IMG/VR virus record: IMGVR_UViG_3300020172_006270
Coordinates: 159,269-223,268 of that record
Direction: 5' to 3' (one strand)
DNA length: 64,000 nt
The translations under genes and the position numbers were made by a program. The notes under the pieces were generated by a model. The model had not been told where the DNA came from. It worked only from the letters and a program-made list of their open reading frames with translations, and did no database searches. Of the stretch, positions 39,137 through 64,000 are shown one piece after another. The stretch's first letter is position 1. Each line of letters starts with the position of its first letter.

Positions 39137-39188
39137 GGGTATTCTCCTTTTTTGATGGTGACGGCAATACATATCATAGGAGGAGCCT

Positions 39189-46775: not shown

Positions 46776-46869
46776 GGCAAACCCTGTTTTATTAGTGTGT
46801 TGGCTATATATTCTGTCCAAACAACCTACAAGGAAGCGAGGACTCCAACTTAATTAGAAAAGGAATATA

Positions 46870-48741
46870 ATGGATCAAGCCGTATTTTTCAAGAGCAAAC
46901 GTGACTCTGTTTGGCGGGGCAAACACAAAACCCTGGAAGAATTCTATAAGAGTGGTGGGAAGATACTTAAACGAGGGGAGGGCAAAAAGAGTCGTCTCCA
47001 ATATGATCCCGACTATTACACTCTCGACAAGTATGAACTTGAAATTGATCCCGATGAGCCGCTGGAAAACTTCGATACTTACGATTCGGCCCGTCGTCAA
47101 AAAGAGATCATCAAGTGCTGCAACAGCTTCGCTTATTTCTGCCACAAATATGTGAAGATTCTTCACCCGATGGATGGTTTGATTCCTTTCGTATTATACA
47201 ACTATCAGCGAAAGGTTATCCAAGAATACGAAAACCACCGATTTAACATCATCAGTAAGTTTCGTCAAGGGGGACTGACGACAGTAACTTTGCTGTGGGG
47301 CATGTGGCGCTGCATGTTCCAACTCGACCAACAGATCATGATCTTGGGTCGAACTGACCGTGACGCCACAGATATTGGCATGATGGTGGATCGTTCCATT
47401 GAGAACTTCCCAGATTGGTTGAAGCCAATAAAAGATGGTAAGTGGAATGACCACATGAAGATGTTCACGGACACCGGGTCGGCCTTAAAATTTCACTCTC
47501 CTGAAGCTGCTCGTGGTAAGTCCGTTACATTCTTGATTGTGGACGAAGCTGCGTTCATTGATGACATGGACAAGCACTGGAAAGCTATGTGGCCTATCCT
47601 TTCGACGGGTGGTGGTTGCACCCTTGTATCCACGGTTAATGGTCTGGGCAACTGGTATGAACAAACCTACCACGAAGCACAAGAAAAGCAAAACCGATTC
47701 AATATCATCGACTTGGATTATTGGGAACATCCCGACTACAACGACGATGAATGGGTTAAAGAACAAAAGGCACAACTCGGCGAGAAAGGCTTCTTGCAGG
47801 AAGTGTTGCGTGAGTTCCTTGGCTCCGGTGACACTTACTTCTCTGCTAAGGTCATCACACAACTCACAGAGCAAACCAGAAACAATTACCCTAGCCGCAA
47901 GTTATTCCCGAAATGGGTCAACAAGGCAGGCCGTATTGCTGTGTTGGAAAGTGAAGACCACAACAAGGGTGCTATGTGGGTCTGGAAAGAACCAATTGAT
48001 GGCCATGAATATATCATTGGCGCTGACGCCTCTGAAGGCCAAGGCAACAATAACGACAATTGCTGTTTTCAGGTAATTGATACAGCAACTTTGGAACAAG
48101 TGGCCGAGTTTTACTCCAATATCATTGTGCCTCACGAATTCGCTCAGGTGCTTAATGAAGTGGGCATTTATTACAACAATGCTCTGATTGTTGTCGAAAA
48201 CATGGGTCCAGGCGGGGCTGTTCTAAGCAACCTGCAATTCACCTTGTTTTACGAGAACCTTTATTACGAAAGCCTTAAATCGGCCAACGTAAAACCGGGC
48301 ATCAAAATTGGTCAAGTAAACCGATCTCTATATTTGGAATCTCTCCAAAATCGGCTATTGAACCAAACTGTGCGTATTAACAGTATGCGATTTGTTATGG
48401 AACTTCAGACTTTTGAGTACAACCCTGTCACTCGCAAGGCTGAAGCCCAAAAAGGCAAGCACGACGACGCTATTATGTCTATGTGTATGGCCCTTTATGT
48501 TCGTGATTCCATGTTGCGAGACATACCTATGGGGGCAGAGATTCCGAAAGAAGTAACGGCCACGCTAAAAGCTCAGGTATATGAAGAAATCAAACGTGAA
48601 TTGATGGAAGGAAGACCAGAAGATTTCCTTATGGATGATGAAATAGACCTTTTAGCGCCCGACAAAGATACTGTCATGCCCGGTGTTATTTTCAACATTG
48701 AGCGTCGGAACGATAGACTGCTTAAAGAATTTGGGTGGTAA
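46870..48741 (+). CDS. gp17: Terminase large subunit, T4 gp17-like
   Basis: LYNYQ, KFRQGGLTT, IVDEAAF, VSTVNG, GADASEG, VENMGPG, HDDAIM. Confidence 0.95.
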   Translation: MDQAVFFKSKRDSVWRGKHKTLEEFYKSGGKILKRGEGKKSRLQYDPDYYTLDKYELEIDPDEPLENFDTYDSARRQKEIIKCCNSFAYFCHKYVKILHPMDGLIPFVLYNYQRKVIQEYENHRFNIISKFRQGGLTTVTLLWGMWRCMFQLDQQIMILGRTDRDATDIGMMVDRSIENFPDWLKPIKDGKWNDHMKMFTDTGSALKFHSPEAARGKSVTFLIVDEAAFIDDMDKHWKAMWPILSTGGGCTLVSTVNGLGNWYEQTYHEAQEKQNRFNIIDLDYWEHPDYNDDEWVKEQKAQLGEKGFLQEVLREFLGSGDTYFSAKVITQLTEQTRNNYPSRKLFPKWVNKAGRIAVLESEDHNKGAMWVWKEPIDGHEYIIGADASEGQGNNNDNCCFQVIDTATLEQVAEFYSNIIVPHEFAQVLNEVGIYYNNALIVVENMGPGGAVLSNLQFTLFYENLYYESLKSANVKPGIKIGQVNRSLYLESLQNRLLNQTVRINSMRFVMELQTFEYNPVTRKAEAQKGKHDDAIMSMCMALYVRDSMLRDIPMGAEIPKEVTATLKAQVYEEIKRELMEGRPEDFLMDDEIDLLAPDKDTVMPGVIFNIERRNDRLLKEFGW

Positions 48742-49708: not shown

Positions 49709-50043
49709 AAACAAACACAAACGAGACAAAAGCGGCTTTGCAGAAAGCATTAGCGCAAGTACCGCAAGACCATGCTTTGTCAGAAGTACGTTATCACATA
49801 CGGGCCGCTCTAGGAAAGCTGGAGACTGTTGAGAAGAAACGGGATCGTCGTGAGGTTAACTCGGAACGTCGTGAATTGGCACGGGGCCAAGGCAATGCGT
49901 ATTCGTATGATCCATTCCGGGCAATTCAGGCTATTGACGAAGAAATCGCCAAAGAAAAAGCCAAGATTGAAAATATTCAACGCCGCCGTACACAAGATGA
50001 CGAGAAAGATGACGGCGATGAGCTTCAAACAGTTCTTGGTTAA
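49705..50043 (+). CDS. Small coiled-coil protein
   Basis: Overlaps upstream stop by 4 nt; charged helical composition. Confidence 0.7.
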   Translation: MKTNTNETKAALQKALAQVPQDHALSEVRYHIRAALGKLETVEKKRDRREVNSERRELARGQGNAYSYDPFRAIQAIDEEIAKEKAKIENIQRRRTQDDEKDDGDELQTVLG

Positions 50044-50575
50044 TGAAGGACGTAGAAACAAATACGACTACTCTTCATTATTGGTCGAACCGCCAGAAGA
50101 AATTGCAGACAATGTAATTTCTTGGGGGTGGGATCATGTACCTAATGAATCCGTGTTTCTTGATCCTAAAGACCCCAGCTTTGGTCGAGAAGATGACCCT
50201 CACATTACTTTAATCTATGGCATTCACACAGACATCTTAAAAGAAGTGTCTGATCTGTTTGTTGACGAGAAAGAGTTTGAGTGTAAGTTGGGCAAGATTG
50301 ATATGTTTACGAAAAGCGATAAATTCGATGTGCTAATCGTAAGCGTGGAATGCGAAGAGTTACACAGGCTAAATCGTAAGATGCGAAGAAATTTAGAAGC
50401 CACTGAAAGCTATCCTGTTTATGTGCCTCACGTTACAATTTGCTACCTGAAAAAAGGTCAAGGCAAACAATACATTGGCAATGACGTTTTTGTAGATGAA
50501 AAGTTTACGATCAACAAGATTTTCTTTTCTTCAAAGACTGGCGAAAAAACTCCAATAAAGTTAGGTGCAAAATGA
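50018..50575 (+). CDS. 2H phosphoesterase, Acb1/T4 gp57B-like (start revised to 50018)
   Basis: Two HxT motifs PHITLIYG and YVPHVTICY; MSFKQFLVNE. Confidence 0.8.
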   Translation: MSFKQFLVNEGRRNKYDYSSLLVEPPEEIADNVISWGWDHVPNESVFLDPKDPSFGREDDPHITLIYGIHTDILKEVSDLFVDEKEFECKLGKIDMFTKSDKFDVLIVSVECEELHRLNRKMRRNLEATESYPVYVPHVTICYLKKGQGKQYIGNDVFVDEKFTINKIFFSSKTGEKTPIKLGAK

Positions 50576-51589: not shown

Positions 51590-52489
51590 ATGTTCAAATT
51601 ATCTTCTATTCTTGTCTTGTTGGTTAGTTTCCTGGCCCCGATTGCCAGCGCCGAAACGCCCTCTGTGTATTCATATGATCCATTAGACAATATGCCGATT
51701 ATGGAGCGTCGGCCTACTGGCTTTGCAGGCATGGCTCCAATCGAGCAACGTGGTCCAGAGTTCCGTAAGTTTCTCGCTGCATCTGTCAAAATCAGCGTGG
51801 GCGGCGGTTCTGGTTCTGGAACCATTGTTTATTACGATGCAGCTAAAAATCTCGCTTACGTCGCATCTTGCGGGCATATGTGGAGTCAAGGAACCATGTC
51901 CGTAGAAGAAGGCAAGCGTCGAAATATGACTTGCAAAGTAATCACTTGGTATCATAACGAAAAGAAGCTGGACTCTCCCAAGAGTTACAATGCCAATGTA
52001 ATATTCTATAGCTATATCAGCGGTCAGGATACGTCACTTGTGACTTTTACTCCAGATTGGCAACCTGAGTATTTCCCCATTGCTCCTGTGAACTACGAGT
52101 ACAAGGCTGGTCGCCATGCTCACTCATTGGGATGTGATGGCGGCAATGAGGTCGCACACTATGACATTGAAATAATTGGACTTGGTGGCGGTGATTTGGT
52201 TACGAATCAAAACAGCCCACGCCCAGGACGTTCTGGTGGTGGGCTGATGGATGACGACGGATATTACATCGCAACTTGCTGGGGAACTCAATATCGTGAT
52301 GGAAGCGGCAAGGGATATTTTACGCCTCTATCTGCCATTCATGGATATTGGAACAAGCAAAGTGGATATGAGTTCTTGTTGAACCAGAAGCCGGGCGGCA
52401 CAGCAGCACGCCAGATTCCGGTCAAAGACCGCAGTGGTCCTCAAGGCACATATAAGCCAGAATATATTTTGCTTCCAGGTGGACGTTAA
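51590..52489 (+). CDS. Secreted trypsin-like (S1) serine protease
   Basis: Signal peptide ending ASA; GSGT, SCGH, DTSL, PGRSGGGL. Confidence 0.85.
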   Translation: MFKLSSILVLLVSFLAPIASAETPSVYSYDPLDNMPIMERRPTGFAGMAPIEQRGPEFRKFLAASVKISVGGGSGSGTIVYYDAAKNLAYVASCGHMWSQGTMSVEEGKRRNMTCKVITWYHNEKKLDSPKSYNANVIFYSYISGQDTSLVTFTPDWQPEYFPIAPVNYEYKAGRHAHSLGCDGGNEVAHYDIEIIGLGGGDLVTNQNSPRPGRSGGGLMDDDGYYIATCWGTQYRDGSGKGYFTPLSAIHGYWNKQSGYEFLLNQKPGGTAARQIPVKDRSGPQGTYKPEYILLPGGR

Positions 52490-53133
52490 TGTTGAAAGTT
52501 GAAAAAAGACATCATTATATCCAATTTGGACTTGGAGATCGGTGGGCTTCTGTTTCTTTTCTTCTCAGAAAATCAGAAGAAAAAGGCCGTCCAATCTTTG
52601 TTGATGGTGACTTCGACCCAGAACATCTTTACGAGTTAGCCAGTTGTTTTGATACAACTGGCAAACTCATTTATGAGAAGGGTCATCCAATATTGCCAAT
52701 GAATTACCATGATGCTTTTTCAACAAAATATCTTCCAACCAAAAAGACTTGGAGAGATACAAATAGCAACGTGGTGGCATACCAATTCGATGGCATTTCT
52801 TCATTCTGGAATAAAAATCCACCAGACGAAGAAATAGCTGAATTTTTGAGCTATCTTTCTCGCCGTGGATTTACGCCAGTAGATTTAGGACACATGAAGC
52901 CATTGCCTTATATCATCGAAACATTAGCCACATGCAAATTCTTCGTTGGATGCGCAAGTGGTATAGGCCACATCAGTATGAGCGTCAATACGCCTATGTA
53001 CATTATTTTGCACAATCTGCAAGAAGGCACTGGCCCACCATACAGTGTTGAATATCAACAAACAGTTTACAGCAGCAAGCCAGATGTTCAATTCTTCAAA
53101 TATCTGAAGGACTTGATGAACCATTTAGGTTAA
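52489..53133 (+). CDS. GT9-like (GT-B) glycosyltransferase-related protein
   Basis: GLGD, FFVGCASGIGHI...NTP. Confidence 0.55.
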   Translation: MLKVEKRHHYIQFGLGDRWASVSFLLRKSEEKGRPIFVDGDFDPEHLYELASCFDTTGKLIYEKGHPILPMNYHDAFSTKYLPTKKTWRDTNSNVVAYQFDGISSFWNKNPPDEEIAEFLSYLSRRGFTPVDLGHMKPLPYIIETLATCKFFVGCASGIGHISMSVNTPMYIILHNLQEGTGPPYSVEYQQTVYSSKPDVQFFKYLKDLMNHLG

Positions 53134-55017: not shown

Positions 55018-55431
55018 ATGAAAGCACTTACAGTTAAAAAACTCCAGGAAGCATTTGTGGGCAAGGTATGCACCATACTCACTTCTACCGTTGCCAAGAC
55101 GGACTTCCAGGACCAGCAATTCTCTGACTTCTTTACGGCAATTGTCGAGTCTTTGGATGAAGATGGCATCTTCGCCAAGCACCACATGACAGGATGCCGG
55201 AACTATTACACTTGGCCACACATCATAGGCGTTCTTGAAGAACAAGTGATTCAACAAGATGACCCTAAGTATGAAGAAATCATGCAGGAGATCAAAAAGG
55301 CACCTGTTGAGCGTCAACAGAATATTGTGCCTGTTGATCCTAATGCTTCCCTTTTTGTAGACCCCGAAATGATGGCATCCCTGGCACGACAAGCTAAGGA
55401 GGCCCAAGGAAAAATGTTGAGGAAACAATAA
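55018..55431 (+). CDS. Hypothetical protein
   Basis: Coupled between primase and glpX. Confidence 0.75.
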   Translation: MKALTVKKLQEAFVGKVCTILTSTVAKTDFQDQQFSDFFTAIVESLDEDGIFAKHHMTGCRNYYTWPHIIGVLEEQVIQQDDPKYEEIMQEIKKAPVERQQNIVPVDPNASLFVDPEMMASLARQAKEAQGKMLRKQ

Positions 55432-56372
55432 TGCGTAACAATATGGATTTGATCCGTGTAACTGAAGCTGCTGCAATCGCTGCCGCAGCCTGGGTGGGCA
55501 GTGGCAAGAAACTAGAAGCTGATTTGGCCGCTACTAACGCCATGCGTGACAGACTTGATCGCATGGATGTTGCAGGAACAGTCCAGATTGGAGAAGGCAA
55601 AAAGGACCAAAGCTATGGTCTTTTCAAAGGCGATCTCGTTGGACGTGGCTGGCACCATAATGAAGATGGCGAAATCATTATGTGGGATCGAAATACAAAT
55701 GAAGTGGACATCGCTCTTGATCCCATTGATGGAACAACGCCCACGGTAACGTCAGGGCCAGAAGCCATGAGTGTTATTGCTATGGCCGACAAAGGGGCCA
55801 TGTATGACACAGATGAGCATTACATGCTTAAACTAGCTGTCAGTGGCGATGTAGCCCGCAGAACCAATCTGTACCTTAGCACGCCATTGCCTGCATTGTG
55901 CAAGCAAGTTGCCGACGTATTGAATAAGCCTGTAGATAAATTGATGGTTTGTATTCTTAACCGTCCACGTCACGAAGAATACATTGCCCAAATGAGAGAG
56001 CTAGGAGTCAGAATCAAACTGATCCAGGACTGTGACATCTCTGGTGCAATCGCTGCTGCCGATGGTGGAAATATTGATATGCAGTTTGGCGTAGGTGGCG
56101 CACCTGAAGCTGTAGTCACTGCTGCTGCGGTCAAGTGCCTGAGAGGATTCTTCTTAGCCCAAGTTTGGGACAAAGATGTGGGTCTAAAGGGAGACACCTT
56201 CTCCCATGATGACTTGGTGAGAAGTCACTGTTGTTTTGCTGCCACCGGAATTACTGATGGCAGTCTATTGAAGGGAGTTTCTGTGAACTCTCGTGGTCCT
56301 ACAACTCACAGTGTCATTATGCGATCTGAAAGTGGCACAGTCCGCTGGGTTCAAACCAGACACGGCAATTAG
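55431..56372 (+). CDS. glpX: Fructose-1,6-bisphosphatase class II
   Basis: RVTEAAAIAA, IGEG, DIALDPIDGT, YMLKL, RPRH, GVGGAPE, ATGITDG. Confidence 0.93.
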   Translation: MRNNMDLIRVTEAAAIAAAAWVGSGKKLEADLAATNAMRDRLDRMDVAGTVQIGEGKKDQSYGLFKGDLVGRGWHHNEDGEIIMWDRNTNEVDIALDPIDGTTPTVTSGPEAMSVIAMADKGAMYDTDEHYMLKLAVSGDVARRTNLYLSTPLPALCKQVADVLNKPVDKLMVCILNRPRHEEYIAQMRELGVRIKLIQDCDISGAIAAADGGNIDMQFGVGGAPEAVVTAAAVKCLRGFFLAQVWDKDVGLKGDTFSHDDLVRSHCCFAATGITDGSLLKGVSVNSRGPTTHSVIMRSESGTVRWVQTRHGN

Positions 56373-56767
56373 TTTTTGGACTTCAGATTGAAGCTGCCAA
56401 TGTAACGACTACCATCAAAGGTTCCCTTGAATACGCCAGGGGATTCTTTGCTCATTTCGCCCTTCCATTCATAATCAGCACCGTCAATTTTGGCGGTGCC
56501 TGTTAGTTTATCGGGAGGACCACTGAACTTCACTTCGTAGTCGAATTTAACGCCCATCCAGATTCCATAGAAGCGACCTTTCCATTTGTCGCCTCCCAGG
56601 TCTGTAACTTCGGCAGTCATAATGCCGTCGAGTTTTCTATTGGTCGTAATCCACTCCCCTTCATAAACGAACTGAGCCGCTTCATTAGCGGCTACAGTCG
56701 GATGGATTGTGGATGTCGTTGTTGCCAATACTGTCATTAGCAACAAAGCTGCAAATGCACTTTTCAT
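56369..56767 (-). CDS. Secreted beta-barrel-like protein
   Basis: Signal peptide; G/W/F-rich strands. Confidence 0.75.
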   Translation of the reverse strand: MKSAFAALLLMTVLATTTSTIHPTVAANEAAQFVYEGEWITTNRKLDGIMTAEVTDLGGDKWKGRFYGIWMGVKFDYEVKFSGPPDKLTGTAKIDGADYEWKGEMSKESPGVFKGTFDGSRYIGSFNLKSKN

Positions 56768-56770
56768 CTA

Positions 56771-58672
56771 TCACCTTTTTTGAAGTTGTTCTTTGAAATA
56801 TTGCGTTCTCTCTGTGAACGAAAGCATTTCAATCTTCTTTTGTTCTACTAAAGGCTGTGGCACGCCTTTACGTTCATGAAGACGCTGTTTGTAAAAGTTC
56901 TTCACATCTGTTGCATTCCACTCTATTTCCATATTGGCAAGTTCGTGAACTCCCAACTCGCTTTCGAGTTCAGCAAGGTCTGCTCGGTCTTTCATATTCT
57001 TCAAATGCAATAGCAATTGACGTTTTGTATCTTCGTCCGACAACGCTTTAATGCGAACCCTCAAATCATCTTTGATTTGTCTGACAGACTTTTCTTTTGG
57101 TTCTTCTTTCGGCGTCGGATTTGGAATGGCCTCGGCACCATCCATGCCCGCAACTCTGGTCTTTGGATCAGGCGGTGCATCTGTAGGAGTGTCGTCGCCC
57201 TTGTGCATAGGCTCGCTCAATCCAGAGCCGTCTCCAGTGAACTTTTTCACTTCAGGGACTTCATCGCCAATACTTCCAACACGGTCCCTCAAAGAAGGCT
57301 TGGCTGGCTCAGGGGTTGGCATTGTAGGGGCTGGATCAGGCATAGGCGCAGTCTTTGGCACTTCAGTCTCATCGCCGCCCATTGCTGCATCACGAGCCGC
57401 ATCAACGTCCGAAGGGGCCGTTGAACGAGGCATCTTTCTACGAGCCTCTTCAGTCGTTGCTTTTGCTTTTTCTACTCTGGACTGAAAGTCCATTGCATTT
57501 TTGATTGGATCGCCATCTTGTTCCCAACGACCCAGACGGTGCAAGAAGTCAAACCAGTGTGAACCAACTTTCTTGTTGCCGCACTTTTTGCTGTCTGGCA
57601 ACTTGCCTTCTTTTTGAGCGGCAAGAATGTTTCTTCGTGGATCGCCAATACGCATAATCCAAGGCATCTTGAAAATACCGTGGTCGTTTAAGCAGCCATC
57701 AACCTTGGTTCCAGAACCATGTGATGCTCCACCACCATAGATGTCCCATTTGGCTTTCTCATCAGGATTAAGTTCATCCCAACGCTTACCACTGGACGGT
57801 GGCGTAAACAATGCTCCCTTTTCAGAAGCAGCAGACGCAGGACTAGCACTTGGGCCAGCGGGACTTGGAGAAGCACTTGCTTTGGCCTCAAGACCATTTT
57901 TGACACTAATGAACTCATCTTCAGCAATTTTTCTAATTGATGCTTTTTTGCTTTTAAGCCTGTCGATTAAATCTTGTGCTTTTTTTGCATCCAATTTTCC
58001 AGTTTTGCCCCAATCGGCGATTATGCCGATGACTTGATCCATGCCTTTATCCATCTTGGAATCAGGCTCCTCTTCAACAGGATTTGGAGATACAGCAGGC
58101 TCAGATACAGCAGGCACTTCAGGTTCTTCTTTTGTTCCCATTGAAGCAGCGGCAGACATAGGAGAACTGTCTTCTGCACCGCCAATAATAGACATGAGCT
58201 TTTGCTTGAGTTCTTGAGCTTTGGTGTCGATCATGCCTACCAGACGTAGGTTCTCAGCACCAGCAGGAACATCTTCGTTGAGTTGTTCTTCTAGTGATTC
58301 GCAGATGTCTCGAAGAGACTTATAATCGGCCAAAGAGAGATTGTTGGGATTGAAAGATTCCTGAGTAGAACCCAGGTCGTCGCCGAGCTTGTTTTGCCAG
58401 AAATATGGGTTGGTTTGGTTGTAACGACCGTGCCACATATTGGACATAGTGTTCTTAAAGCGGTCCCATAGACCCCGACGTTGCGCAAGGGGCGTCATCG
58501 GGTTCATAAGGGTCCGTTTCAGATCAGAAACCCAAGCATCAACGATTTGATTGACTTGTTTTTGGATATTTGCAGCCTTCTCGTGTTTTAGCACGTCTTC
58601 AGGCTGGACTCCAGTTTCAACGTCAGGTGCGGCTTCTGTAAGCCTATTGCGATATTCTTTGAATCCCAGCAT
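56771..58672 (-). CDS. Large Pro/Ala-rich protein with CTS-like N-terminus, putative internal head protein
   Basis: MLGFKEYRNRLTE; internal LNE/LVE sites; TATATA box and SD AAGGAG. Confidence 0.7.
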   Translation of the reverse strand: MLGFKEYRNRLTEAAPDVETGVQPEDVLKHEKAANIQKQVNQIVDAWVSDLKRTLMNPMTPLAQRRGLWDRFKNTMSNMWHGRYNQTNPYFWQNKLGDDLGSTQESFNPNNLSLADYKSLRDICESLEEQLNEDVPAGAENLRLVGMIDTKAQELKQKLMSIIGGAEDSSPMSAAASMGTKEEPEVPAVSEPAVSPNPVEEEPDSKMDKGMDQVIGIIADWGKTGKLDAKKAQDLIDRLKSKKASIRKIAEDEFISVKNGLEAKASASPSPAGPSASPASAASEKGALFTPPSSGKRWDELNPDEKAKWDIYGGGASHGSGTKVDGCLNDHGIFKMPWIMRIGDPRRNILAAQKEGKLPDSKKCGNKKVGSHWFDFLHRLGRWEQDGDPIKNAMDFQSRVEKAKATTEEARRKMPRSTAPSDVDAARDAAMGGDETEVPKTAPMPDPAPTMPTPEPAKPSLRDRVGSIGDEVPEVKKFTGDGSGLSEPMHKGDDTPTDAPPDPKTRVAGMDGAEAIPNPTPKEEPKEKSVRQIKDDLRVRIKALSDEDTKRQLLLHLKNMKDRADLAELESELGVHELANMEIEWNATDVKNFYKQRLHERKGVPQPLVEQKKIEMLSFTERTQYFKEQLQKR

Positions 58673-58705
58673 GATTTCTCCTTGCTTTATATATCTCTGC
58701 TGAGA

Positions 58706-59164
58706 TTAGTTATGATCGCTAACGTATTCACCAATCTTTTTTAGGGACATTAGGCAAGAATCGAATCGGTGATAGTCGCTAGAAATATAATCCAGGGCTA
58801 TTTCATCAAATTTGTCCGAAATCTCATCGTCTACTTCAAAGTAGATTGCTTTGCCTTTCTTCCCGACAACCTTGTACTTGTGCATGAGAATATAAGCGGC
58901 AGCACCCAAGTCCGTTACGAAGCGGTGATTCCTCGTCTCGAAGTTGTATTCGCCGATCTTCTTCAGCGACATGATGCAGGCATCAAATCGGTGAAACTCA
59001 CTTGATAAGTAATCAAGGGTCAATTGGTCAAACTTCTCAGCAGTATGGTCTTCAGTGAGCAAGAAGTAAATATCCTTGCCTCGGCGACCAATAACCTTGA
59101 TGTCGTGCATCAACAAGTATGCTGCGGCTCCAAGGTCGCTAACACTCTTCTGATTCTTTTTCAT
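58706..59164 (-). CDS. Two-repeat protein (DUF5659-like; start revised to 59164)
   Basis: Duplicated DLGAAAY.LMH...IYF...LDY.SS..HRFD.C.MSLKKIGEY. Confidence 0.7.
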   Translation of the reverse strand: MKKNQKSVSDLGAAAYLLMHDIKVIGRRGKDIYFLLTEDHTAEKFDQLTLDYLSSEFHRFDACIMSLKKIGEYNFETRNHRFVTDLGAAAYILMHKYKVVGKKGKAIYFEVDDEISDKFDEIALDYISSDYHRFDSCLMSLKKIGEYVSDHN

Positions 59165-59228
59165 TTCTAGCCTTTCTCTTTCTGTAAATCCCGCATCCAA
59201 ATTGAATGCGGGATGGGGTTGCATCTTC

Positions 59229-60179
59229 TTAGAACACTTTCTTCAACTGGCCTGCGACCAGCTTTCCTACGGTCCTCTCTGCGATCTTAGCAGAAACCAG
59301 ACCTTTCAAACCACTGTATGCAGCCTGAACTTCACTGTATGTGATTTTAGTCTGCGCACCATTGACGCAAAGGACATCGTTTTCCCACTGCAAACATAGA
59401 TGAGGAACATTCAAACGAATTGCTTTGATAATTCCATCTGGGTCTGCAATCTTGTTGGCTCCGAAAACCTTATCAATAGCCGCCATACATTTGGTAGCGT
59501 TATTCATCAAGTCGTTCCCGGTGTCCTTTACCAAGCCTTCACTGATGTCGCTCTTGTGTTCAAAAATCTGTCGCTTCTTCTTGCGACAGGTCCACAAGTT
59601 ATTGTGGCTAAAACCAGTGCTGCGAGCTTCGTGATAAGCTGTCCCGTCGTATTCCGATTCAGTAAGTCCCGAAAGAGTTAGGTTCTCCTTCAAGCCATCA
59701 TCTAAAACCTCAAGTGGCTTTACATTCTTCTCAGAGGCCATCTTGCGAATATCACACAGGTCAATAATGCCATCCTCAGCAGCGACATTCCAATCCAAAT
59801 TGTCCTCTCTTGGAGTGAAGCCACCAACGGCAGCTTCGTGCATTAGGCCAACTGCAATGGGAATGAAATACTTTTCATCGACCCATACTGTTTCTTCTTT
59901 ATCGTTAATGGTCTTGAAGCCATAGCTTGGCTTGCCCCGAACGTATTCATGCCTTTTTTCAATCACCGGATACTTTTTACCAAGTGTGAAACTCAAGTGC
60001 TTGATGTTATTGTTTTGCAAAAAATGCAAAGGTTCTGGTGCATATTCCATCATCGAGTATTCTTTAGGTTTCTCGAAGCTGGTATTCGTCTTCTCTTCGT
60101 GTTCTCTTCGCTCGCTACCCGACATTTCTCCGAGTGGCTTGTAAAAGCGATCTGTATCCTCTGTTGTAACTTCGTTCAT
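59229..60179 (-). CDS. Hypothetical protein
   Basis: 316-aa ORF in co-oriented run. Confidence 0.75.
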   Translation of the reverse strand: MNEVTTEDTDRFYKPLGEMSGSERREHEEKTNTSFEKPKEYSMMEYAPEPLHFLQNNNIKHLSFTLGKKYPVIEKRHEYVRGKPSYGFKTINDKEETVWVDEKYFIPIAVGLMHEAAVGGFTPREDNLDWNVAAEDGIIDLCDIRKMASEKNVKPLEVLDDGLKENLTLSGLTESEYDGTAYHEARSTGFSHNNLWTCRKKKRQIFEHKSDISEGLVKDTGNDLMNNATKCMAAIDKVFGANKIADPDGIIKAIRLNVPHLCLQWENDVLCVNGAQTKITYSEVQAAYSGLKGLVSAKIAERTVGKLVAGQLKKVF

Positions 60180-60202
60180 TGGTTCTCATCCTTTTTTCTA
60201 AC

Positions 60203-61207
60203 TTACTTTGCTGCTTCCGCTGCCAGCAGACAGCCACGAGCAACACTGTATAACGGATCACTTGGCTTAATGATCTCGCCGATTTGAATAGGCAAATCAG
60301 CCTGCTGAATCGTTTCCTTAAAGATGGTAGCAAAACCATAAGGAGAAGAAGTTCCACCAGCAATTACCACGTCAACCGGAGCGTCGGCACGAACCGATTT
60401 GGTAATGTCTGCAAAACCCTTCTTGATACCCTGTACGGTATGTTCTATCATCAGCCTGTATTGAGTATGAATGGCTCGTTCCACCAACGAGGCAGGAGCC
60501 TTAGTCAAGTCAATCTTCGTCTTTTCTCTATTGATGAAAGAAATTGACTCGCCCGTGGCCTTAGCAGCCTGACGGTCGATCCAATCTCCTGAGTTGACAA
60601 TCGAAAAAGCGAAAACAGGATTGCCATACATCGCATAGCATAGGTTAACCATGCCAGCACCAAAGCTCACGCCAATACCAGTGAAAGCCTTCTTGCCAAG
60701 TTCTGCATAGACCAGAGCTAGGGCTTCATTGATTGGGTGTGCATCTACCTTTCGACCCGTCTCATCCTTGTATGCCTTGAAGATGGCTTCAAGGATTCTC
60801 TGGTGATAATCGGCGTCTGTATCTTCATTGATGGCGTTGGCTGGTACGCAGTAGTACAACACTTCGCCGTCTTTTGTAAGGCCGTCAATCAATGAGTGCA
60901 TCATGATCGACATAATCTGGAATGCGTCTTTTTCTTTTGGATTAACGCATCCGTGAATCATGGGCCGCTTCAGTTCAAGCTGGCTCATTGTGTAAGTCAT
61001 ATTGCAAGCCGCCTCGCCCAATGCGTAGGCTACCTTGTCCCGTTCAATCAACGGGACGCCTGCCGTCTTCATCATGTTAAAGACGAAACGATTGTCTAAC
61101 GGGAGTTCCAAGAAAGCATTGACTTCTCTCTTGTATACAAAATCTCCCTTGTCGTCTCTGTGGCAGCAGACGAGATTGTATGTTCCGCAGTCAAATCCAA
61201 TTGGCAT
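60203..61207 (-). CDS. Actin-fold ATPase (MreB/ParM/FtsA superfamily)
   Basis: Phosphate-1 IGFDCGT, connect-1 INEALA, phosphate-2 VSFGAG, adenosine IAGGTS, connect-2 VARG. Confidence 0.85.
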   Translation of the reverse strand: MPIGFDCGTYNLVCCHRDDKGDFVYKREVNAFLELPLDNRFVFNMMKTAGVPLIERDKVAYALGEAACNMTYTMSQLELKRPMIHGCVNPKEKDAFQIMSIMMHSLIDGLTKDGEVLYYCVPANAINEDTDADYHQRILEAIFKAYKDETGRKVDAHPINEALALVYAELGKKAFTGIGVSFGAGMVNLCYAMYGNPVFAFSIVNSGDWIDRQAAKATGESISFINREKTKIDLTKAPASLVERAIHTQYRLMIEHTVQGIKKGFADITKSVRADAPVDVVIAGGTSSPYGFATIFKETIQQADLPIQIGEIIKPSDPLYSVARGCLLAAEAAK

Positions 61208-61210
61208 AAT

Positions 61211-61441
61211 TTACTCCCGTTTTCCAAAATCAATTTTAGGTGAAGACCCAAAGTCAGGAATCATAAACTCACTATCTTTAGGTGATTCCATTTTCTTTTC
61301 AGTTCTTTGTTCCACTGCTTGTGCAGAAACCTTAACACCATCGGTGTTTAAGTTTATGGTTAGCTCCAAGGCAATTGATACCTGGATTTCACCATCTTGG
61401 GTCAATATTTTGACCGATCCTGGTTTGATTAGCTGTGGCAT
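61211..61441 (-). CDS. Small hypothetical protein upstream of actin-like gene
   Basis: Tightly coupled ORF. Confidence 0.7.
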   Translation of the reverse strand: MPQLIKPGSVKILTQDGEIQVSIALELTINLNTDGVKVSAQAVEQRTEKKMESPKDSEFMIPDFGSSPKIDFGKRE

Positions 61442-61476
61442 ATCCTATTTACCTTCCCTGCTATTTTTTTCCCAAA

Positions 61477-62463
61477 TTAAGCTAGTGATATGCGATTTTT
61501 TCCATATGGCCATCGTTCAAACATTATCCTGATCCCGGTCTGTAATTCCTCTCGACTTAGCTCGGTCAAGCAGGGTTTTTGAGCTTTATTGCACTTGGGA
61601 CAATCACCGAATTTGAAGCACGGTCCACAATCCCAATTACCATTATCACGGTGTTTCTGAACTAATACGAAGTTAAAATGCTTCCCATAAGCCTTTCCAT
61701 CTGCAAATGTAAAGATGCCTACGAGCGGCTTTTTGAGTCCTCCGGCCATGTGAAAGGTTGCAGTATCAACAGATATGACATAATCTGCCACTGCTATGTA
61801 CGCCATCCACTCTTTGATAGTAGCCCCATATATCCCTGGGACGCCCAGGCGTGTAAGGTCTGCTATCTCTTTGTTATGTAGTCCAACCAAATTGCAATCT
61901 TTTGTGGCCTCAACGACAGCCTCAATTTGAGATGGCATCAAAGTCTTCACGGCCATTTTTGAGACTGGTGCAAATAACACGGTCGGCTTGCTCGCATCTG
62001 GAGCAATGACTCTTAACTTCTTGCGACAGTATTCCAGAAACGCTGGGTTGAATCGAAACTGCATTTCATGTTTGTTTAACGTGACGCCACAGTATTTAGC
62101 CCATATATCCGCTCTGTGTTCCAGGCACATTGGAGCGTTTAGGTTTTCATATCTATCTGCAATTGAGACGCAGGTATTGTAATGATTGATGTAGTCGTTG
62201 ATGTTGACTGTCCTGGAATCAACTACTTCACTAAGACAGGGATGATCTTTGGCGGCGTCCATGTATTCTGGCAAGCAAGCAAAAATCAAATCGACTTCTG
62301 GACATATGGCTTTGAAGTCGGCGAATAGCATTCGTTGCATTAAAACATCGCCCAATCCTCCTTTGTCGTGCCATATGAGGATGCGATTTCGTTTGATGTG
62401 GAAGTCCCTAAGACTCAGTGGTTTAGGCTTAGAAACGGCGGCTGGTTTACGAAGATGTCCCAT
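61477..62463 (-). CDS. GT9-family glycosyltransferase (heptosyltransferase-like)
   Basis: GGLGDVL, VISVDTATFHMAGGLKKPLVGIF, Cys-rich C-terminus. Confidence 0.82.
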   Translation of the reverse strand: MGHLRKPAAVSKPKPLSLRDFHIKRNRILIWHDKGGLGDVLMQRMLFADFKAICPEVDLIFACLPEYMDAAKDHPCLSEVVDSRTVNINDYINHYNTCVSIADRYENLNAPMCLEHRADIWAKYCGVTLNKHEMQFRFNPAFLEYCRKKLRVIAPDASKPTVLFAPVSKMAVKTLMPSQIEAVVEATKDCNLVGLHNKEIADLTRLGVPGIYGATIKEWMAYIAVADYVISVDTATFHMAGGLKKPLVGIFTFADGKAYGKHFNFVLVQKHRDNGNWDCGPCFKFGDCPKCNKAQKPCLTELSREELQTGIRIMFERWPYGKNRISLA

Positions 62464-62484
62464 GCCATGATAGAGTGTGTCAAT

Positions 62485-62520
62485 AAAAAAACCCCGGTAG
62501 GAGATTCCTACCGGGGCCTG
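62485..62520 (-). terminator. Intrinsic terminator
   Basis: ccccggtagg/cctaccgggg + T-run on - strand. Confidence 0.8.
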
Positions 62521-62536
62521 AAATTCAAAGAATCAA

Positions 62537-63151
62537 TTAGCTATTGCAGACGCTCTTGACCGAGACAAGAACTTGAACTGCTGTGGTGCTACCACCAGAA
62601 ACAGTGTTTGCAAACTCCAACTTCGTGACCGAGAGATCGCCGTGGTTGAAGACCTGGGTTTCGCCAGCGCCAAGATCGAAGATTGCATTTGCTGTGCCGT
62701 TCAGACGAACCTTGACAGCAGTGCCGCCCTGGTTAGCAATCTGTACGAACACTGCGAAGCCGCCTGTGTCGCCAAGGATGTCCACGACGTTAGCCGTGTA
62801 GGTCGATCCATTGGTAACAGACAGGTCGTAAACCTTCGGAAATACGTTTTCGTCGGAAACGTCGCTGTATACAGAGCCGTCATCGGTAACGACTTCAATG
62901 AAGGCGTCGGCCAATGCGCACTGAGGATAAGCAAAACGCTTCCAGTAGTTGCAGTCGGTGAACTGTTCGCCGTCCTTCAACTTACGATATGTGTGATTTG
63001 GGCCAGCAACGTAGATTGTACGTTGAATCGAAGGACTCATTTCAGCACCCAATTGGCTATGATTCAAAGCCGAAATGGATGTTGCTGTTGCTGGGTTCAG
63101 GTCCATATATCCCTGAGCAATGCTGTTCAAAGCTACCTTAAATACGCTCAT
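62537..63151 (-). CDS. Putative structural protein (start revised to 63151)
   Basis: SD AGGAG; beta-rich C-terminal half; N-half resembles 1104..1403. Confidence 0.65.
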   Translation of the reverse strand: MSVFKVALNSIAQGYMDLNPATATSISALNHSQLGAEMSPSIQRTIYVAGPNHTYRKLKDGEQFTDCNYWKRFAYPQCALADAFIEVVTDDGSVYSDVSDENVFPKVYDLSVTNGSTYTANVVDILGDTGGFAVFVQIANQGGTAVKVRLNGTANAIFDLGAGETQVFNHGDLSVTKLEFANTVSGGSTTAVQVLVSVKSVCNS

Positions 63152-63204
63152 GTTTTCTCCTAAGAGTGTATCAGAGTTGTGTGATTCCCCTAACTTCACA
63201 TTAG

Positions 63205-63822
63205 CTATGCAGGTAACATGAGGATTTGTCCGCTTGGGAAGAGTTTCTTGAATAGATTCTCACCAAATCCCGTTGGAATCAACGTCACGGCCCTGCCAGC
63301 GGCGGCAGCTTGATAGAATTCCTCATTTTCAACACCCACAACCCAGCCTGCATCTTCAGTGCTTCCGTTGATCTCCGGCTGGTATCCTTTACTTTGAATG
63401 TGAGATATTGCCAGTTTGATTTGATTGCCTGTAAGTGTTTTTACAGGAGCGATGGCATTTGTAAGGAGAACGCACTTTTTGTTTCTCAACGGTTGGTCGG
63501 CCCGAATTGGACCAAAAGGGATTTCAGATTCATTCATGAATTCCTCTATTGGATTTGATTGCATGTCACAAAGCAATTCACGAACGTAGCCAAATAAATG
63601 CTTGTTCTCTTTTAATTCTTCTCTTGTGATTATTCTCTCTTCACCTTTGAGTAAATAAGCTGAGTCTTCTCGACACGCCAAGTAAACCTTGACTCCAGGG
63701 AAAGCGGACTCCATATAGGGTCTGAGCAACTTTAGTTGAACGATGTGTTCTTTGTTATTGCCGAAGTAAGCAATACAATAGTTGTCTTTGACTTTGGCGT
63801 ACTGAGGTAAAGGTATTGGCAT
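63205..63822 (-). CDS. Hypothetical protein, possibly degenerate GT-B fold
   Basis: WVVGVE..FY.AAAAG..V resembles GT9 C-terminal motif. Confidence 0.5.
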   Translation of the reverse strand: MPIPLPQYAKVKDNYCIAYFGNNKEHIVQLKLLRPYMESAFPGVKVYLACREDSAYLLKGEERIITREELKENKHLFGYVRELLCDMQSNPIEEFMNESEIPFGPIRADQPLRNKKCVLLTNAIAPVKTLTGNQIKLAISHIQSKGYQPEINGSTEDAGWVVGVENEEFYQAAAAGRAVTLIPTGFGENLFKKLFPSGQILMLPA

Positions 63823-64000
63823 GAATAAAAACCATAATGAAGCTATTGCTGGAACAAGTGCGTTTCAGGCTTTTGCAAAAGAGTTTGGCCCGGACGACGT
63901 TTACAATAGAATTATAGTAGAAGAAATCCTGAAGGCATTATTGGGCATCAAAGATAAAGAAGATGCCGAGGAGAAGAAAGATGGCAATAAAATCAACTGA

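What the first reader, a model, noticed from the sequence alone, without database searches (positions are those of the whole stretch)
60203..61441. Phage-encoded actin-fold ATPase with a small coupled upstream ORF
All five actin-superfamily motifs are recognisable in a 334-aa protein (phosphate-2 is SxGAG rather than DxG), with no Hsp70 substrate domain. Established: several jumbo phages position DNA or capsids with the tubulin PhuZ, and plasmid actins work with small adaptors. Inference: an actin-based cytomotive system organising infection, with 61211..61441 as candidate adaptor.
Basis: partly seen in the sequence, partly recalled or inferred. Interest (0 to 1): 0.7.

Follow-up and report, generated by a model that had tools for sequence, protein, structure and literature searches.

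The report
Huge-phage actin with small partners
A giant freshwater/sediment bacteriophage carries a highly conserved gene for an actin-like protein of the recently named "volactin" family, flanked by two small phage-only partner genes; it probably builds filaments inside the infected cell, something well documented for phage tubulins but barely studied for phage actins.

Summary
Window 60203-61207(-) encodes a 334-aa actin-fold ATPase with no extra domains. The 76-aa ORF at 61211-61441(-) ends 3 nt before its ATG, and the actin's GGGAG ribosome-binding site lies inside the small ORF's 3' end. The window is a T4-like huge phage (Gp23 capsid, Gp20 portal, T4-type terminase).

The protein is not an orphan. 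It matches Pfam PF25216 "Volactin" over its full length (234 bits; cut-off 35). The AlphaFold2 model (pLDDT 93) best matches filament-forming actins (MamK, MreB, BeeR, F-actin), not kinases or chaperones. Ser in place of Asp at phosphate-2 marks the whole bacterial and phage branch of the family.

The gene is a conserved core gene of a large clade of huge phages. Two complete relatives lack tubulin. It sits in a conserved three-gene module: small ORF, actin, then a ~70-aa DUF5659-like domain protein. Some cellular relatives fuse the actin domain to HU or ParB-HTH DNA-binding domains.

Filament formation is likely. A role in positioning DNA or particles, and the adaptor roles of the two small proteins, remain inference. 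The complex prediction gave no answer, and no centromere-like repeats were found.

The parts
60203..61207 (-). Actin-fold ATPase, 334 aa, Pfam Volactin family (bacterial/phage branch). It has no N- or C-terminal extension.
   Evidence: ORF. PF25216 E 4.3e-69, 233.9 bits, covering 1-321 of 321 profile positions. AF2 model pLDDT 93.3, pTM 0.90. Best folds are MamK filament at TM 0.74/0.76, then MreB, BeeR and actin.
61181..61192 (-). Phosphate-1 motif D6-C-G8-T9
   Evidence: Read directly from the sequence. D6 and T9 are at least 90% conserved and G8 is invariant in 47 family members.
60725..60727 (-). Glu161 of the P-I-N-E-A motif. It corresponds to the catalytic Glu of MreB/ParM; that equivalence rests on established knowledge of those families.
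   Evidence: At least 90% conserved in the family. It aligns with the S-E-P motif of MamK (alignment).
60644..60667 (-). Phosphate-2 motif S181-F-G-A-G-M186-V-N. Ser and Met stand where H. volcanii volactin, MreB, ParM and actin have Asp and Thr. In relatives this loop is the intein insertion site.
   Evidence: H. volcanii motif from PMC10869688 Supplementary Fig. 8b. Intein in P0121.
60341..60358 (-). Adenosine motif G284-G-T-S-S-P289, identical to the GGTSSP of H. volcanii volactin
61211..61441 (-). Conserved 76-aa protein with no known relatives; candidate filament regulator or adaptor. It has three parts: an N-terminal beta-type block (residues 1-32, 61346-61441), a variable charged linker (residues 33-57), and a C-terminal peptide M-x-I61-P-D-F64-x5-K-x-x-F72-G-K74 (61214-61270).
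   Evidence: Alignments. dN/dS 0.09-0.28. Found in 39 of 41 loci. No family, fold or Atlas relative. The motif is unique in the genome.
61214..61218 (-). GGGAG ribosome-binding site of the actin gene, embedded in the last codons of the small ORF (6 nt before the ATG)
   Evidence: Read directly. The same GGAG/GGGAG-stop-ATG layout recurs in most relatives.
58706..59224 (-). p172: a tandem pair of a ~70-aa domain, DUF5659-like by shape. It is the second and better conserved partner candidate. More distant phages have a single copy.
   Evidence: About 80% identical where the actin is 78-85% identical. Single and tandem forms. Found in 42 of 44 loci. AF2 pLDDT 86.5. Atlas match to DUF5659 at TM 0.73 and to viral clusters. 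No PDB fold match.
59229..60179 (-). p316: a protein of unknown function inserted between the actin gene and p172. It is clearly present only in the window's closest relatives, with weak 24-28% matches at the same position in three others. It is not part of the conserved core.
   Evidence: absent from most loci, where p172 follows the actin gene directly; no Pfam hit.
61477..62463 (-). GT9-like glycosyltransferase, the first gene of the co-directional unit. It is linked to the module in most relatives.
   Evidence: PF01075 E 4.7e-8, 33.1 bits. Synteny. A GT9-like gene also lies upstream of the module in L048 at 41% actin identity.
62489..62519 (-). Terminator-like hairpin (14-bp stem, 8 G-C pairs, T-run) between p220 and the GT9-like gene; a likely upstream boundary of the transcription unit
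   Evidence: a consensus scan only
56771..58672 (-). p633: a long Pro/Ala/Ser/Glu/Lys-rich, low-complexity protein downstream of p172. Only parts of it are conserved.
62537..63822 (-). p220 (62537-63199) and p205 (63205-63822): conserved upstream neighbours of unknown function

Best explanation
The gene encodes a minimal, single-domain member of the Volactin family of prokaryotic actins. It is a core gene of a large clade of T4-like huge phages from freshwater and sediment. The most likely mechanism is as follows. During infection the protein binds ATP in a conserved actin-type pocket (D6/G8/T9, E161, S181-G185, G284-T286) and polymerises into filaments. Because it has no membrane-targeting or cargo-binding extension of its own, it is coupled to its target by the two small phage-specific proteins encoded on either side. 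The upstream 76-aa protein has the layout of a folded head joined by a flexible tether to a short docking peptide. The downstream protein is a dimer-like DUF5659-type domain. The filaments would organise the infected cell by positioning phage DNA, a replication factory or assembling particles. This would do for these tubulin-less phages what PhuZ does for phiKZ-like phages and AlpC/AlpA does for prophage CGP3. Shown here: gene reality, family membership, fold, conservation of the nucleotide-binding residues, module conservation, phage origin and absence of tubulin. Inferred: polymerisation (by homology), the cargo, and which small protein does what. The Ser/Met replacement at phosphate-2 suggests slower hydrolysis and more stable filaments than in H. 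volcanii volactin; this too is inference.
For: Family and fold. PF25216 scores 233.9 bits over its full length. The AF2 model has pLDDT 93.3. The top structural matches are all filament formers: MamK filament 5LJV at TM 0.74/0.76, then MreB, BeeR filament and F-actin. The profile search against PDB ranks MamK, then BeeR, MreB, FtsA, and far behind PilM, DnaK and EutJ. In the tree the family separates from MreB/MamK-like and PilM outgroups with support 98-100. The founding member forms dynamic filaments in vivo (PMC10869688).

Selection. There are 1792 homologues, the best 120 at 74-100% identity, on contigs up to 673 kb. The nucleotide-binding motifs are invariant in 29 phage orthologues. In relatives an intein sits inside the phosphate-2 loop; from general knowledge, inteins tend to lodge in functionally critical sites.

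Module. A small-ORF homologue lies upstream in 39 of 41 loci and the p172 domain downstream in 42 of 44. The layout is still recognisable at 41% actin identity. The accessory genes are absent from the cellular loci. The small ORF has dN/dS of 0.09-0.28, with conserved ends and a variable linker.

Link to DNA elsewhere in the family. HU-Volactin fusions occur in Acidobacteriota chromosomes, and P0181 is a ParB-HTH-Volactin fusion.

No competing cytoskeleton. There is no tubulin in this record or in five relatives, two of them complete.

Precedent. In AlpAC the adaptor gene lies upstream of the actin gene and is co-transcribed with it (PMC4446434).
Against: No member of the bacterial and phage branch has been tested. 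The only experimental data concern H. volcanii volactin, which keeps the canonical Asp and Thr at phosphate-2. This branch has Ser and Met at those positions. In ParM, MreB and Hsp70, mutating the equivalent residues impairs hydrolysis (my own knowledge, not tested here). The controlled complex prediction of actin plus small protein gave no answer. No centromere-like repeat array lies within 8 kb, and no notable tandem array lies elsewhere in the window. Neither small protein has a recognisable DNA-binding domain. The neighbourhood is mixed, with glycosyltransferases, a primase, a nuclease and metabolic genes, so it does not point to one process. The RNA evidence is weak: short contigs of relatives in RNA-labelled libraries, where DNA carry-over is not excluded.
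Confidence: 0.55

Rival explanations
1. A scaffold for the host envelope or cell shape. The phage actin acts like MreB or volactin on cell morphology, or organises the neighbouring GT9-like glycosyltransferases. For example, it might remodel the envelope, enlarge the cell or block division so that very large virions can be produced. In this reading it does not move phage DNA or particles.
For: The only characterised family member is a cell-shape determinant. GT9-like glycosyltransferase genes stay linked to the module in most relatives, and they flank it even at 41% actin identity. A further GT9-like gene lies at 52489-53133. The structure resembles MreB about as well as it resembles MamK.
Against: The protein has no amphipathic helix or other membrane-binding extension; it runs from phosphate-1 to the last core helix. 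GT9 is missing from several loci that keep the small-ORF, actin and p172 trio (L008, L031-L033, L036, L037, L042). Fusions elsewhere in the family are to DNA-binding domains, not to envelope domains.
Confidence: 0.17
2. A ParMRC- or AlpAC-type partition system that maintains the huge phage genome as a plasmid-like prophage or carrier-state episome. One small protein would act as a centromere-binding adaptor.
For: IMG/VR labels this record and several relatives 'provirus'. The family includes HU and ParB-HTH fusions. The small-gene-then-actin order matches alpA-alpC.
Against: The phage has T4-like structural genes. No tyrosine integrase is found in this record or in two complete relatives, and ParB_N gives only a marginal hit in one of them. 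There is no iteron or centromere-like repeat array near the operon. The actin is not of the ParM/StbA family; ParM is not found even at E<=1 in the profile search. Neither small protein has a ribbon-helix-helix or HTH signature.
Confidence: 0.1
3. A non-polymerising actin-fold ATPase. It would work as an assembly factor or chaperone-like adaptor in the manner of PilM, FtsA-type anchors, EutJ or the Hsp70 nucleotide-binding domain. The small proteins would be clients or co-factors, and the Ser/Met phosphate-2 would reflect a regulatory nucleotide switch rather than a polymerisation engine.
For: The phosphate-2 motif departs from the canonical Asp and Thr. Weaker profile hits to FtsA, PilM, DnaK and EutJ exist. 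In BFVD the nearest viral structures are Hsp70-like or generic actin folds.
Against: Those matches are 6 to 12 orders of magnitude weaker than MamK and MreB. EutJ ranks only 32nd in the fold search, behind dozens of filament structures. Pfam assigns the protein to Volactin, whose founder polymerises. The very high sequence conservation across the whole surface (75-90% identity over hundreds of phages) is typical of polymer-forming proteins; this last point is inference.
Confidence: 0.12

Closest known systems
Volactin (VolA, HVO_2015) of Haloferax volcanii, founder of Pfam PF25216
   Same: The same Pfam family, with a full-length match at 234 bits. The motif contexts are nearly identical: phage AFTGIGV-S-FGAG against Hv NFTG-LGV-D-FGAG, and GGTSSP in both. 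The actin fold is predicted with high confidence. The closest AlphaFold DB clusters (TM 0.83-0.84, 20-25% identity) are long proteins of 775 and 937 aa with this fold at the N-terminus; their organisms are not given.
   Different: The phage protein has Ser181/Met186 where Hv volactin has Asp/Thr at phosphate-2, and D-x-G-T rather than Q-D-G-S at phosphate-1. It is virus-encoded, and it sits in a module with two phage-only small proteins that cellular loci lack. Volactin's known role is the archaeal rod-to-disk shape transition, which cannot be carried over to a bacteriophage.
AlpC/AlpA of Corynebacterium glutamicum prophage CGP3 (PMC4446434)
   Same: A phage-encoded actin-like protein co-transcribed with a small gene directly upstream. 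AlpA tethers phage DNA to AlpC filaments, and both are needed for efficient phage DNA replication. This is the best functional analogy.
   Different: The actin family is different; no AlpC or ParM-type match was found. The 76-aa protein has no detectable similarity to any known family. No alpS-like repeats lie upstream. The host phage is a T4-like huge phage without an integrase, not a cryptic prophage. There is also a third conserved partner, p172.
MamK (magnetosome actin; PDB 5JYG, 5LJV)
   Same: It is the best solved-structure relative by both sequence profile (E 6.6e-16) and fold (TM 0.74/0.76). It is of similar size (347 aa) and, like this protein, is an extension-free actin that relies on partner proteins.
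   Different: Only about 17% identical in the structural alignment. Pfam does not assign the phage protein to MreB_Mbl or Actin. MamK-like genes fall outside the Volactin clade in the tree. MamK keeps the Asp at phosphate-2 (alignment).
ParM/ParR/parC (type II plasmid partition)
   Same: The concept is the same: a minimal actin plus a small adaptor that docks through a short C-terminal segment. That feature of ParR is from my own knowledge.
   Different: ParM is not detected even at E<=1 with the family profile. The gene order is reversed: in ParMRC the motor gene lies upstream of the adaptor gene (Discussion of PMC4446434). No centromere repeats are present, and no ribbon-helix-helix signature is found.
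PhuZ / phage TubZ tubulin spindles of phiKZ-like jumbo phages
   Same: A phage-encoded cytoskeletal NTPase in very large phages. The proposed role, positioning phage DNA or particles, is analogous.
   Different: A different superfamily (tubulin/FtsZ). PF00091 is absent from this record and from five relatives, two of them complete. These phages have T4-like rather than phiKZ-like structural genes.

Membership tests
Volactin family (Pfam PF25216) | Scores above the curated gathering threshold of the family HMM over its full length | tested here: met
   233.9 bits against a 35-bit cut-off, covering profile positions 1-321 of 321; 233.4 bits in the genome scan.
Volactin family (Pfam PF25216) | Nucleotide-binding motifs like those of the founder (Hv volactin phosphate-2 G-V-D-F-G-A-G-T; adenosine G-G-T-S-S-P) | tested here: inconclusive
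   The adenosine motif is identical, and the phosphate-2 context F-T-G-x-G-V-x-F-G-A-G is identical. The Asp and Thr are replaced by Ser181 and Met186. The same replacement is found in the cellular Acidobacteriota members, so it marks a sub-branch and does not exclude membership.
Volactin family (Pfam PF25216) | Forms a clade apart from MreB/MamK, PilM/FtsA and similar families | tested here: met
   Quick maximum-likelihood tree of 73 sequences. The family is separated from MreB/MamK-like and PilM outgroups by branches with SH-aLRT 98-100. Outgroup identities were confirmed by Pfam.
Volactin family (Pfam PF25216) | [quoted passage not shown] | not testable with these tools
   Shown only for H. 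volcanii VolA-msfGFP (PMC10869688).
ParMRC type II partition system | The actin is of the ParM/StbA family | tested here: not met
   No ParM/StbA Pfam hit. ParM is absent from 114 PDB profile hits at E<=1 (the best 60 are listed, none of them ParM).
ParMRC type II partition system | A centromere of direct repeats adjacent to the operon | tested here: not met
   Repeat searches over 56000-64000 found only chance-level short repeats and the internal duplication of p172. No tandem array lies near the locus.
ParMRC type II partition system | A small DNA-binding (ribbon-helix-helix) adaptor encoded downstream of the actin gene | tested here: inconclusive
   The downstream p172 has no known DNA-binding fold. 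The upstream 76-aa protein has no detectable family. DNA binding itself was not testable.
AlpAC-type phage actin system | A phage-encoded actin co-transcribed with a small adaptor gene upstream | tested here: met
   The gene order and the 3-nt coupling match. Co-transcription is inferred only from the spacing and from the absence of an intervening terminator.
AlpAC-type phage actin system | The adaptor binds repeats on phage DNA and the actin filament | not testable with these tools
   The complex prediction gave no answer. No repeats were found.
MreB/Mbl (PF06723) | Scores above the MreB_Mbl gathering threshold; has a membrane-binding helix or loop | tested here: not met
   PF06723 is not reported for the window protein at E<=1. 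A few relatives carry a precomputed PF06723 hit alongside PF25216. There is no terminal extension for membrane binding.
Hsp70 / sugar-kinase branches of the ASKHA superfamily | Best sequence and structure matches lie in those branches; a substrate-binding domain or sugar-binding lobe is present | tested here: not met
   DnaK scores E 4e-3 against MamK at 7e-16. No kinase appears among the top 50 folds, and EutJ ranks 32nd. The 334 aa hold the core fold and nothing else.
PhuZ/chimallin-type nucleus-forming jumbo phage | Encodes a tubulin (PF00091) | tested here: not met
   Absent from this record and from five relatives, including genomes estimated 100% and 98% complete. Chimallin itself was not searched, because I had no family accession for it.

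The most novel reading that the evidence does not exclude
A large, globally distributed clade of T4-like huge phages (about 370-670 kb) runs its own actin cytoskeleton in place of the tubulin spindle of phiKZ-like phages. In this reading a Ser/Met phosphate-2 volactin forms filaments that are steered by two phage-invented small proteins. One is a tethered-peptide regulator or adaptor, and the other is a dimeric DUF5659-type cargo connector. The wider bacterial branch of the family, with its HU and ParB-HTH fusions, would then be a previously unrecognised class of DNA-positioning actins.
Probability: 0.3. Interest if true: 0.8.

Novelty: new variant of a known kind. Interest (0 to 1): 0.55.

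Why it matters
Phage-built cytoskeletons are known almost entirely from the tubulin PhuZ in nucleus-forming jumbo phages. For actins there is essentially one studied case, AlpC of a cryptic prophage. Here an actin of a different, recently named family is a highly conserved core gene in hundreds of uncultured huge phages that lack tubulin. It always travels with two small partner genes that have no known relatives. If it polymerises, it would show that the largest phages have evolved intracellular organisation at least twice, once with tubulin and once with actin. It would also give volactin-type actins a function outside archaeal cell shape. Finally, it would provide a compact three-protein system of 334, 76 and about 70-172 aa that can be reconstituted in vitro even though the phage is uncultured. 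The natural Ser/Met phosphate-2 variant and the HU and ParB fusions in cellular relatives offer ready-made hypotheses about filament dynamics and DNA coupling.

Tried and rejected
1. Single-sequence searches gave nothing: no real PDB hit and no PHROG. Only profiles reached MamK and MreB.
2. The complex prediction for actin plus small ORF, each supplied with an alignment, returned 'no answer'. The score was 0.25 against a threshold of 0.32, and the partner's pLDDT was 32-46. I do not use it either way.
The substitute was a degenerate DNA pattern for F-G-[A/S]-G-M, 20 residues, then G-D-W-x-D. It returned one locus, L046, which turned out to be a chance match full of stop codons. This was a narrow probe. 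Cellular members exist with a slightly different motif: 9 of 301 sampled Acidobacteriota genomes.
4. Cluster-member names for 10 distant representatives were uninformative; all were unnamed metagenomic proteins.
5. I searched for T4 late promoters (TATAAATA) to time expression. There was one match, which is the number expected by chance, and it is not near the operon. The sigma-70-like scan found fewer sites than in shuffled sequence.
6. No centromere or iteron repeats were found.
7. I tested whether the C-terminal IPDF...FGK peptide is a tag shared by several phage proteins. The full motif is unique to the small ORF, and bare IPDF occurs 4 times against 2.7 expected.
8. The fold of p172 has no PDB match. 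Its partial Pfam match to LidA_Long_CC, seen in 14 of 17 orthologues, does not fit the predicted beta-alpha fold, so I treat it as unexplained.
9. For transcription, RNA-labelled runs hold only short contigs from relatives about 95-97% identical, and DNA carry-over is not excluded.
10. The careful tree did not finish in time, so the quick tree is reported.
11. I looked for a temperate lifestyle. There is no tyrosine integrase and only a marginal ParB_N hit in one relative.
12. I did not search for chimallin, because I had no family accession for it.
Full report
OBSERVATION. The two ORFs exist exactly as described. The first, 60203-61207 on the minus strand, encodes 334 aa. The second, 61211-61441 on the minus strand, encodes 76 aa. 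The small ORF's TAA stop (61213-61211) is followed by three bases and then the actin ATG. The actin's GGGAG ribosome-binding site (61218-61214) lies within the last codons of the small ORF. The window is viral. It carries a Gp23-type major capsid protein (26028-27464), a Gp20-type portal with an intein (32835-35378) and a T4-type large terminase (46870-48741). It forms the last 64 kb of a 223-kb IMG/VR record that CheckV rates 46% complete. The DNA recurs in freshwater and sediment metagenomes.

WHAT THE PROTEIN IS. Pfam places it in PF25216 'Volactin' at E 4.3e-69 and 233.9 bits against a 35-bit cut-off, covering the entire 321-position model. No PHROG matches it, and no single-sequence PDB hit exists. 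I built a profile from 47 diverse family members (A1) and searched the PDB with it. It reaches MamK (5JYG/5LJV, E 6.6e-16), the BeeR filament protein (3e-10), MreB (3e-9) and FtsA (4e-6). PilM, DnaK and EutJ score only 1e-3 to 4e-3, and ParM does not appear at all. An AlphaFold2 model built from that alignment is confident (pLDDT 93.3, pTM 0.90). Its best structural matches are the MamK filament (TM 0.74/0.76), many MreB structures, BeeR and eukaryotic F-actin. EutJ appears only at rank 32, and no sugar kinase is in the top 50. I also built a quick maximum-likelihood tree of 73 sequences. Its outgroups were fetched from Acidobacteriota genomes and verified by Pfam as MreB/MamK-like and PilM. 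The tree separates the Volactin family from both outgroups with support of 98-100.

MOTIFS. Phosphate-1 (D6-x-G8-T9), the P-I-N-E161-A motif, phosphate-2 (S181-F-G-A-G-M186-V-N), G207-D-W-I-D211 and the adenosine motif (G284-G-T-S-S-P) are invariant or nearly so in 29 distinct phage orthologues. They are also strongly conserved across the 47-member family alignment. Supplementary Fig. 8b of the volactin paper gives the H. volcanii motifs: phosphate-2 N-F-T-G-L-G-V-D-F-G-A-G-T and adenosine V-P-V-V-V-T-G-G-T-S-S-P. The phage protein reads A-F-T-G-I-G-V-S-F-G-A-G-M and V-D-V-V-I-A-G-G-T-S-S-P. The kinship is plain, but the canonical Asp and Thr are replaced by Ser and Met. The same replacement (G-I-S-C-G-G-G-M) occurs in chromosomal Acidobacteriota members. 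In ParM, MreB and Hsp70 the equivalent Asp and Thr support hydrolysis (my own knowledge). I infer altered hydrolysis, probably slower, and more stable filaments. This was not tested.

DISTRIBUTION. The word-indexed search found 1792 homologues. The best 120 are 74-100% identical and lie on contigs of up to 673 kb. The exhaustive search of 50%-identity representatives found 937 clusters at E<=1e-3 and 262 at E<=1e-30. Among deposited phage genomes only two match, both uncultured huge phages: LR756511.1 (595 kb, 66% identity) and LR745208.1 (485 kb, 34% identity). BFVD holds no close relative; Bacillus phage G Gp506 is only a generic actin-fold match at TM 0.58. ESM Atlas clusters named 'Volactin domain-containing protein' are 92-100% viral (Uroviricota) or mostly Acidobacteriota. 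One cluster is an HU-Volactin fusion, and one viral cluster carries an intein with a LAGLIDADG domain. I confirmed cellular members directly. Nine of 301 sampled Acidobacteriota genomes have a strong full-length match (234-275 bits), one of them about 1.0 Mb into contig 1 of an 8.8-Mb genome. Two of these carry an N-terminal PF00216 HU/IHF domain. A metagenomic member, P0181, carries a ParB-type HTH. In the tree the window belongs to a fully supported clade of 24 sequences: 17 from known phage loci, including the 41%-identity L048, and 7 unlabelled representatives. The Acidobacteriota genes form a separate, fully supported clade, and LR745208.1 falls elsewhere.

THE MODULE. I fetched 44 related IMG/VR loci. 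Their recurring gene order is p205, p220, (GT9-like), small ORF, actin, (p316), p172, p633. I then searched with profile HMMs built from the phage orthologues. A small-ORF homologue lies within 1 kb upstream of the actin gene in 39 of 41 loci that have enough sequence. A p172-type domain lies within 1.5 kb downstream in 42 of 44. The exceptions are the distant LR745208.1 locus, one short locus, and L048. In L048 the small ORF is recognisable by eye (K-D-G-E-I-T-I-N-L-N-L-N-I, then Y-I-P-D-E) but falls below the HMM threshold. None of the cellular loci has either accessory gene.

The 76-aa protein has three parts. There is a conserved N-terminal block (x-L-I-K-P-x-x-V-K-V-x-T-x-D-G-E-x-x-V-x-I-x-L-E-L-x-I-N-L-N), a variable charged linker, and a conserved C-terminal peptide (W/F/M-x-I-P-D-F-x5-K-x-x-F-G-K). 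E18, F64, F72, G73 and K74 are invariant. Mean column conservation is 0.66, 0.35 and 0.64 for the three parts, and dN/dS is 0.09-0.28. This layout of a head, a tether and a docking peptide is what makes it a plausible filament-binding factor. That is an inference.

It consists of one ~70-aa domain in the more distant phages and two in this clade, which suggests a functional dimer. Its AF2 model (pLDDT 86.5) has no PDB counterpart. By shape it matches viral 'hypothetical' clusters and DUF5659 (TM 0.73 over 68 residues).

Tight gene spacing is not specific to the small-ORF and actin pair. The whole run from 63822 down to 56369 is co-directional with gaps of 3-73 nt. A strong terminator-like hairpin at 62519-62489 suggests that the transcription unit starts with the GT9-like gene.

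Tubulin (PF00091) is absent from this record and from five relatives, including genomes rated 100% (533 kb) and 98% (373 kb) complete. The controlled complex prediction for actin plus small protein returned 'no answer', with a median score of 0.25 against a threshold of 0.32. It counts neither for nor against binding. No centromere-like repeats lie within 56000-64000, and no relevant tandem arrays lie elsewhere in the window. The C-terminal peptide motif is unique in the 223-kb genome. Neither small protein has a recognisable DNA-binding domain. There is no tyrosine integrase in this record or in two complete relatives, and only a marginal ParB_N hit in one of them. This argues against a role in prophage partition. 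RNA-labelled libraries contain short contigs from close relatives that cover the actin gene, but DNA carry-over cannot be excluded.

INTERPRETATION. The best-supported reading (confidence about 0.55) is that this is a filament-forming phage actin of the Volactin family. It would work with two phage-specific small partners to organise the infected cell. This would be functionally analogous to AlpC/AlpA of prophage CGP3, where the upstream co-transcribed AlpA links phage DNA to AlpC filaments (PMC4446434), and to PhuZ in phiKZ-like phages. Family membership, fold, conservation and module structure are shown. Polymerisation rests on homology to H. volcanii volactin, which forms dynamic filaments in vivo (PMC10869688). 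The cargo and the roles of the partners are inferred. The HU and ParB-HTH fusions in cellular relatives are the only hint that points towards DNA as the cargo.

There are three rivals. The first is a scaffold for the envelope or cell shape, linked to the persistently neighbouring GT9-like glycosyltransferases (0.17). The second is a non-polymerising ATPase or adaptor (0.12). The third is an episome partition system (0.10).

NOVELTY. The protein is a member of a named Pfam family, and automatic resources already label viral clusters as 'Volactin domain-containing'. I found no paper that links volactin with phages. The huge-phage survey of Al-Shayeb et al. mentions tubulin homologues but no actin. 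A jumbo-phage cell-biology review that I searched has no passage on phage-encoded actins. The Ser/Met phosphate-2 sub-branch, the phage-only three-gene module and its near-universal presence in a clade of tubulin-less T4-like huge phages appear to be undescribed. I rate it a new variant of a known kind (prokaryotic and phage actin systems with small adaptors), with interest 0.55. A phage cell biologist would want to test it. The three proteins are small enough for in vitro reconstitution, although the phage is uncultured and no mechanism has yet been demonstrated.

Noticed in passing
window 32835-35378 (-): The T4-type portal gene (Gp20 family) is interrupted by an intein (PF14890 Intein_splicing, residues 113-326 of the 847-aa product).
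   Followed up: no
L043:5995-8112 and L044:5995-8112; protein P0121: In some relatives the actin gene carries an intein with a LAGLIDADG homing endonuclease. It is inserted in the phosphate-2 loop, after about residue 182 in window numbering. The ESM Atlas has a viral cluster of 57 such proteins.
   Followed up: partly
L007:5213-5994 (between the small ORF and the actin gene); remnant in L008/L009 at about 5954-5994: A 782-nt insertion separates the small ORF from the actin gene. It encodes an ORF beginning MIGIYGIKNKVNGKIYIGQS, which looks like a GIY-YIG homing endonuclease. L008 and L009 keep a short remnant (MIGIYSIKK). Mobile endonucleases therefore target this junction without disrupting either gene.
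   Followed up: no
window 49829-50575 (+): A 248-aa 2H-phosphoesterase that matches Pfam Acb1 (anti-CBASS; 33.9 bits against a cut-off of 27) and 2_5_RNA_ligase2. It is a candidate counter-defence enzyme that degrades cyclic-nucleotide signals.
   Followed up: no
window 6227-7492 (-), 10282-11541 (-), 55431-56372 (+), 45648-46820 (-), 35977-37044 (-): Host-like metabolic and peptidase genes: glutamate/leucine-type dehydrogenase, class-III aminotransferase, GlpX fructose-1,6-bisphosphatase, M28 peptidase and M14 carboxypeptidase.
   Followed up: no
window 61477-62463 (-), 52489-53133 (+); L048:2725-4788 and L048:8040-9836: Several GT9-like (heptosyltransferase-family) glycosyltransferase genes. 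One stays directly upstream of the actin module in most relatives, and two flank it in a phage whose actin is only 41% identical. The reason for this linkage is unexplained.
   Followed up: partly
L055:1048-2478 (+), L056:1129-2478 (+); protein P0181: Chromosomal Acidobacteriota members of the family are fused to an N-terminal HU/IHF DNA-binding domain (PF00216). A metagenomic member is fused to a ParB-type HTH (PF17762). Nine of 301 sampled Acidobacteriota genomes carry a strong family member.
   Followed up: partly
window 58706-59224 (-): In 14 of 17 orthologues, p172 gives a partial but above-threshold match to Pfam LidA_Long_CC (positions about 66-139 of 177). Its predicted fold, however, is a repeated beta-alpha-beta-beta-alpha-alpha unit that resembles DUF5659. 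The meaning of the Pfam match is unclear.
   Followed up: partly
window 38781-39031: A long imperfect trinucleotide repeat, (TCG)n, of about 84 copies inside the ORF at 38777-39289 (-). It implies a homopolymer-like low-complexity protein segment.
   Followed up: no
whole record G000 and relatives G001, G002: IMG/VR labels these T4-like huge-phage records 'provirus', yet no tyrosine integrase is detectable in this record or in two relatives rated 98-100% complete. The label may come from the records' host-like genes rather than from integration.
   Followed up: partly
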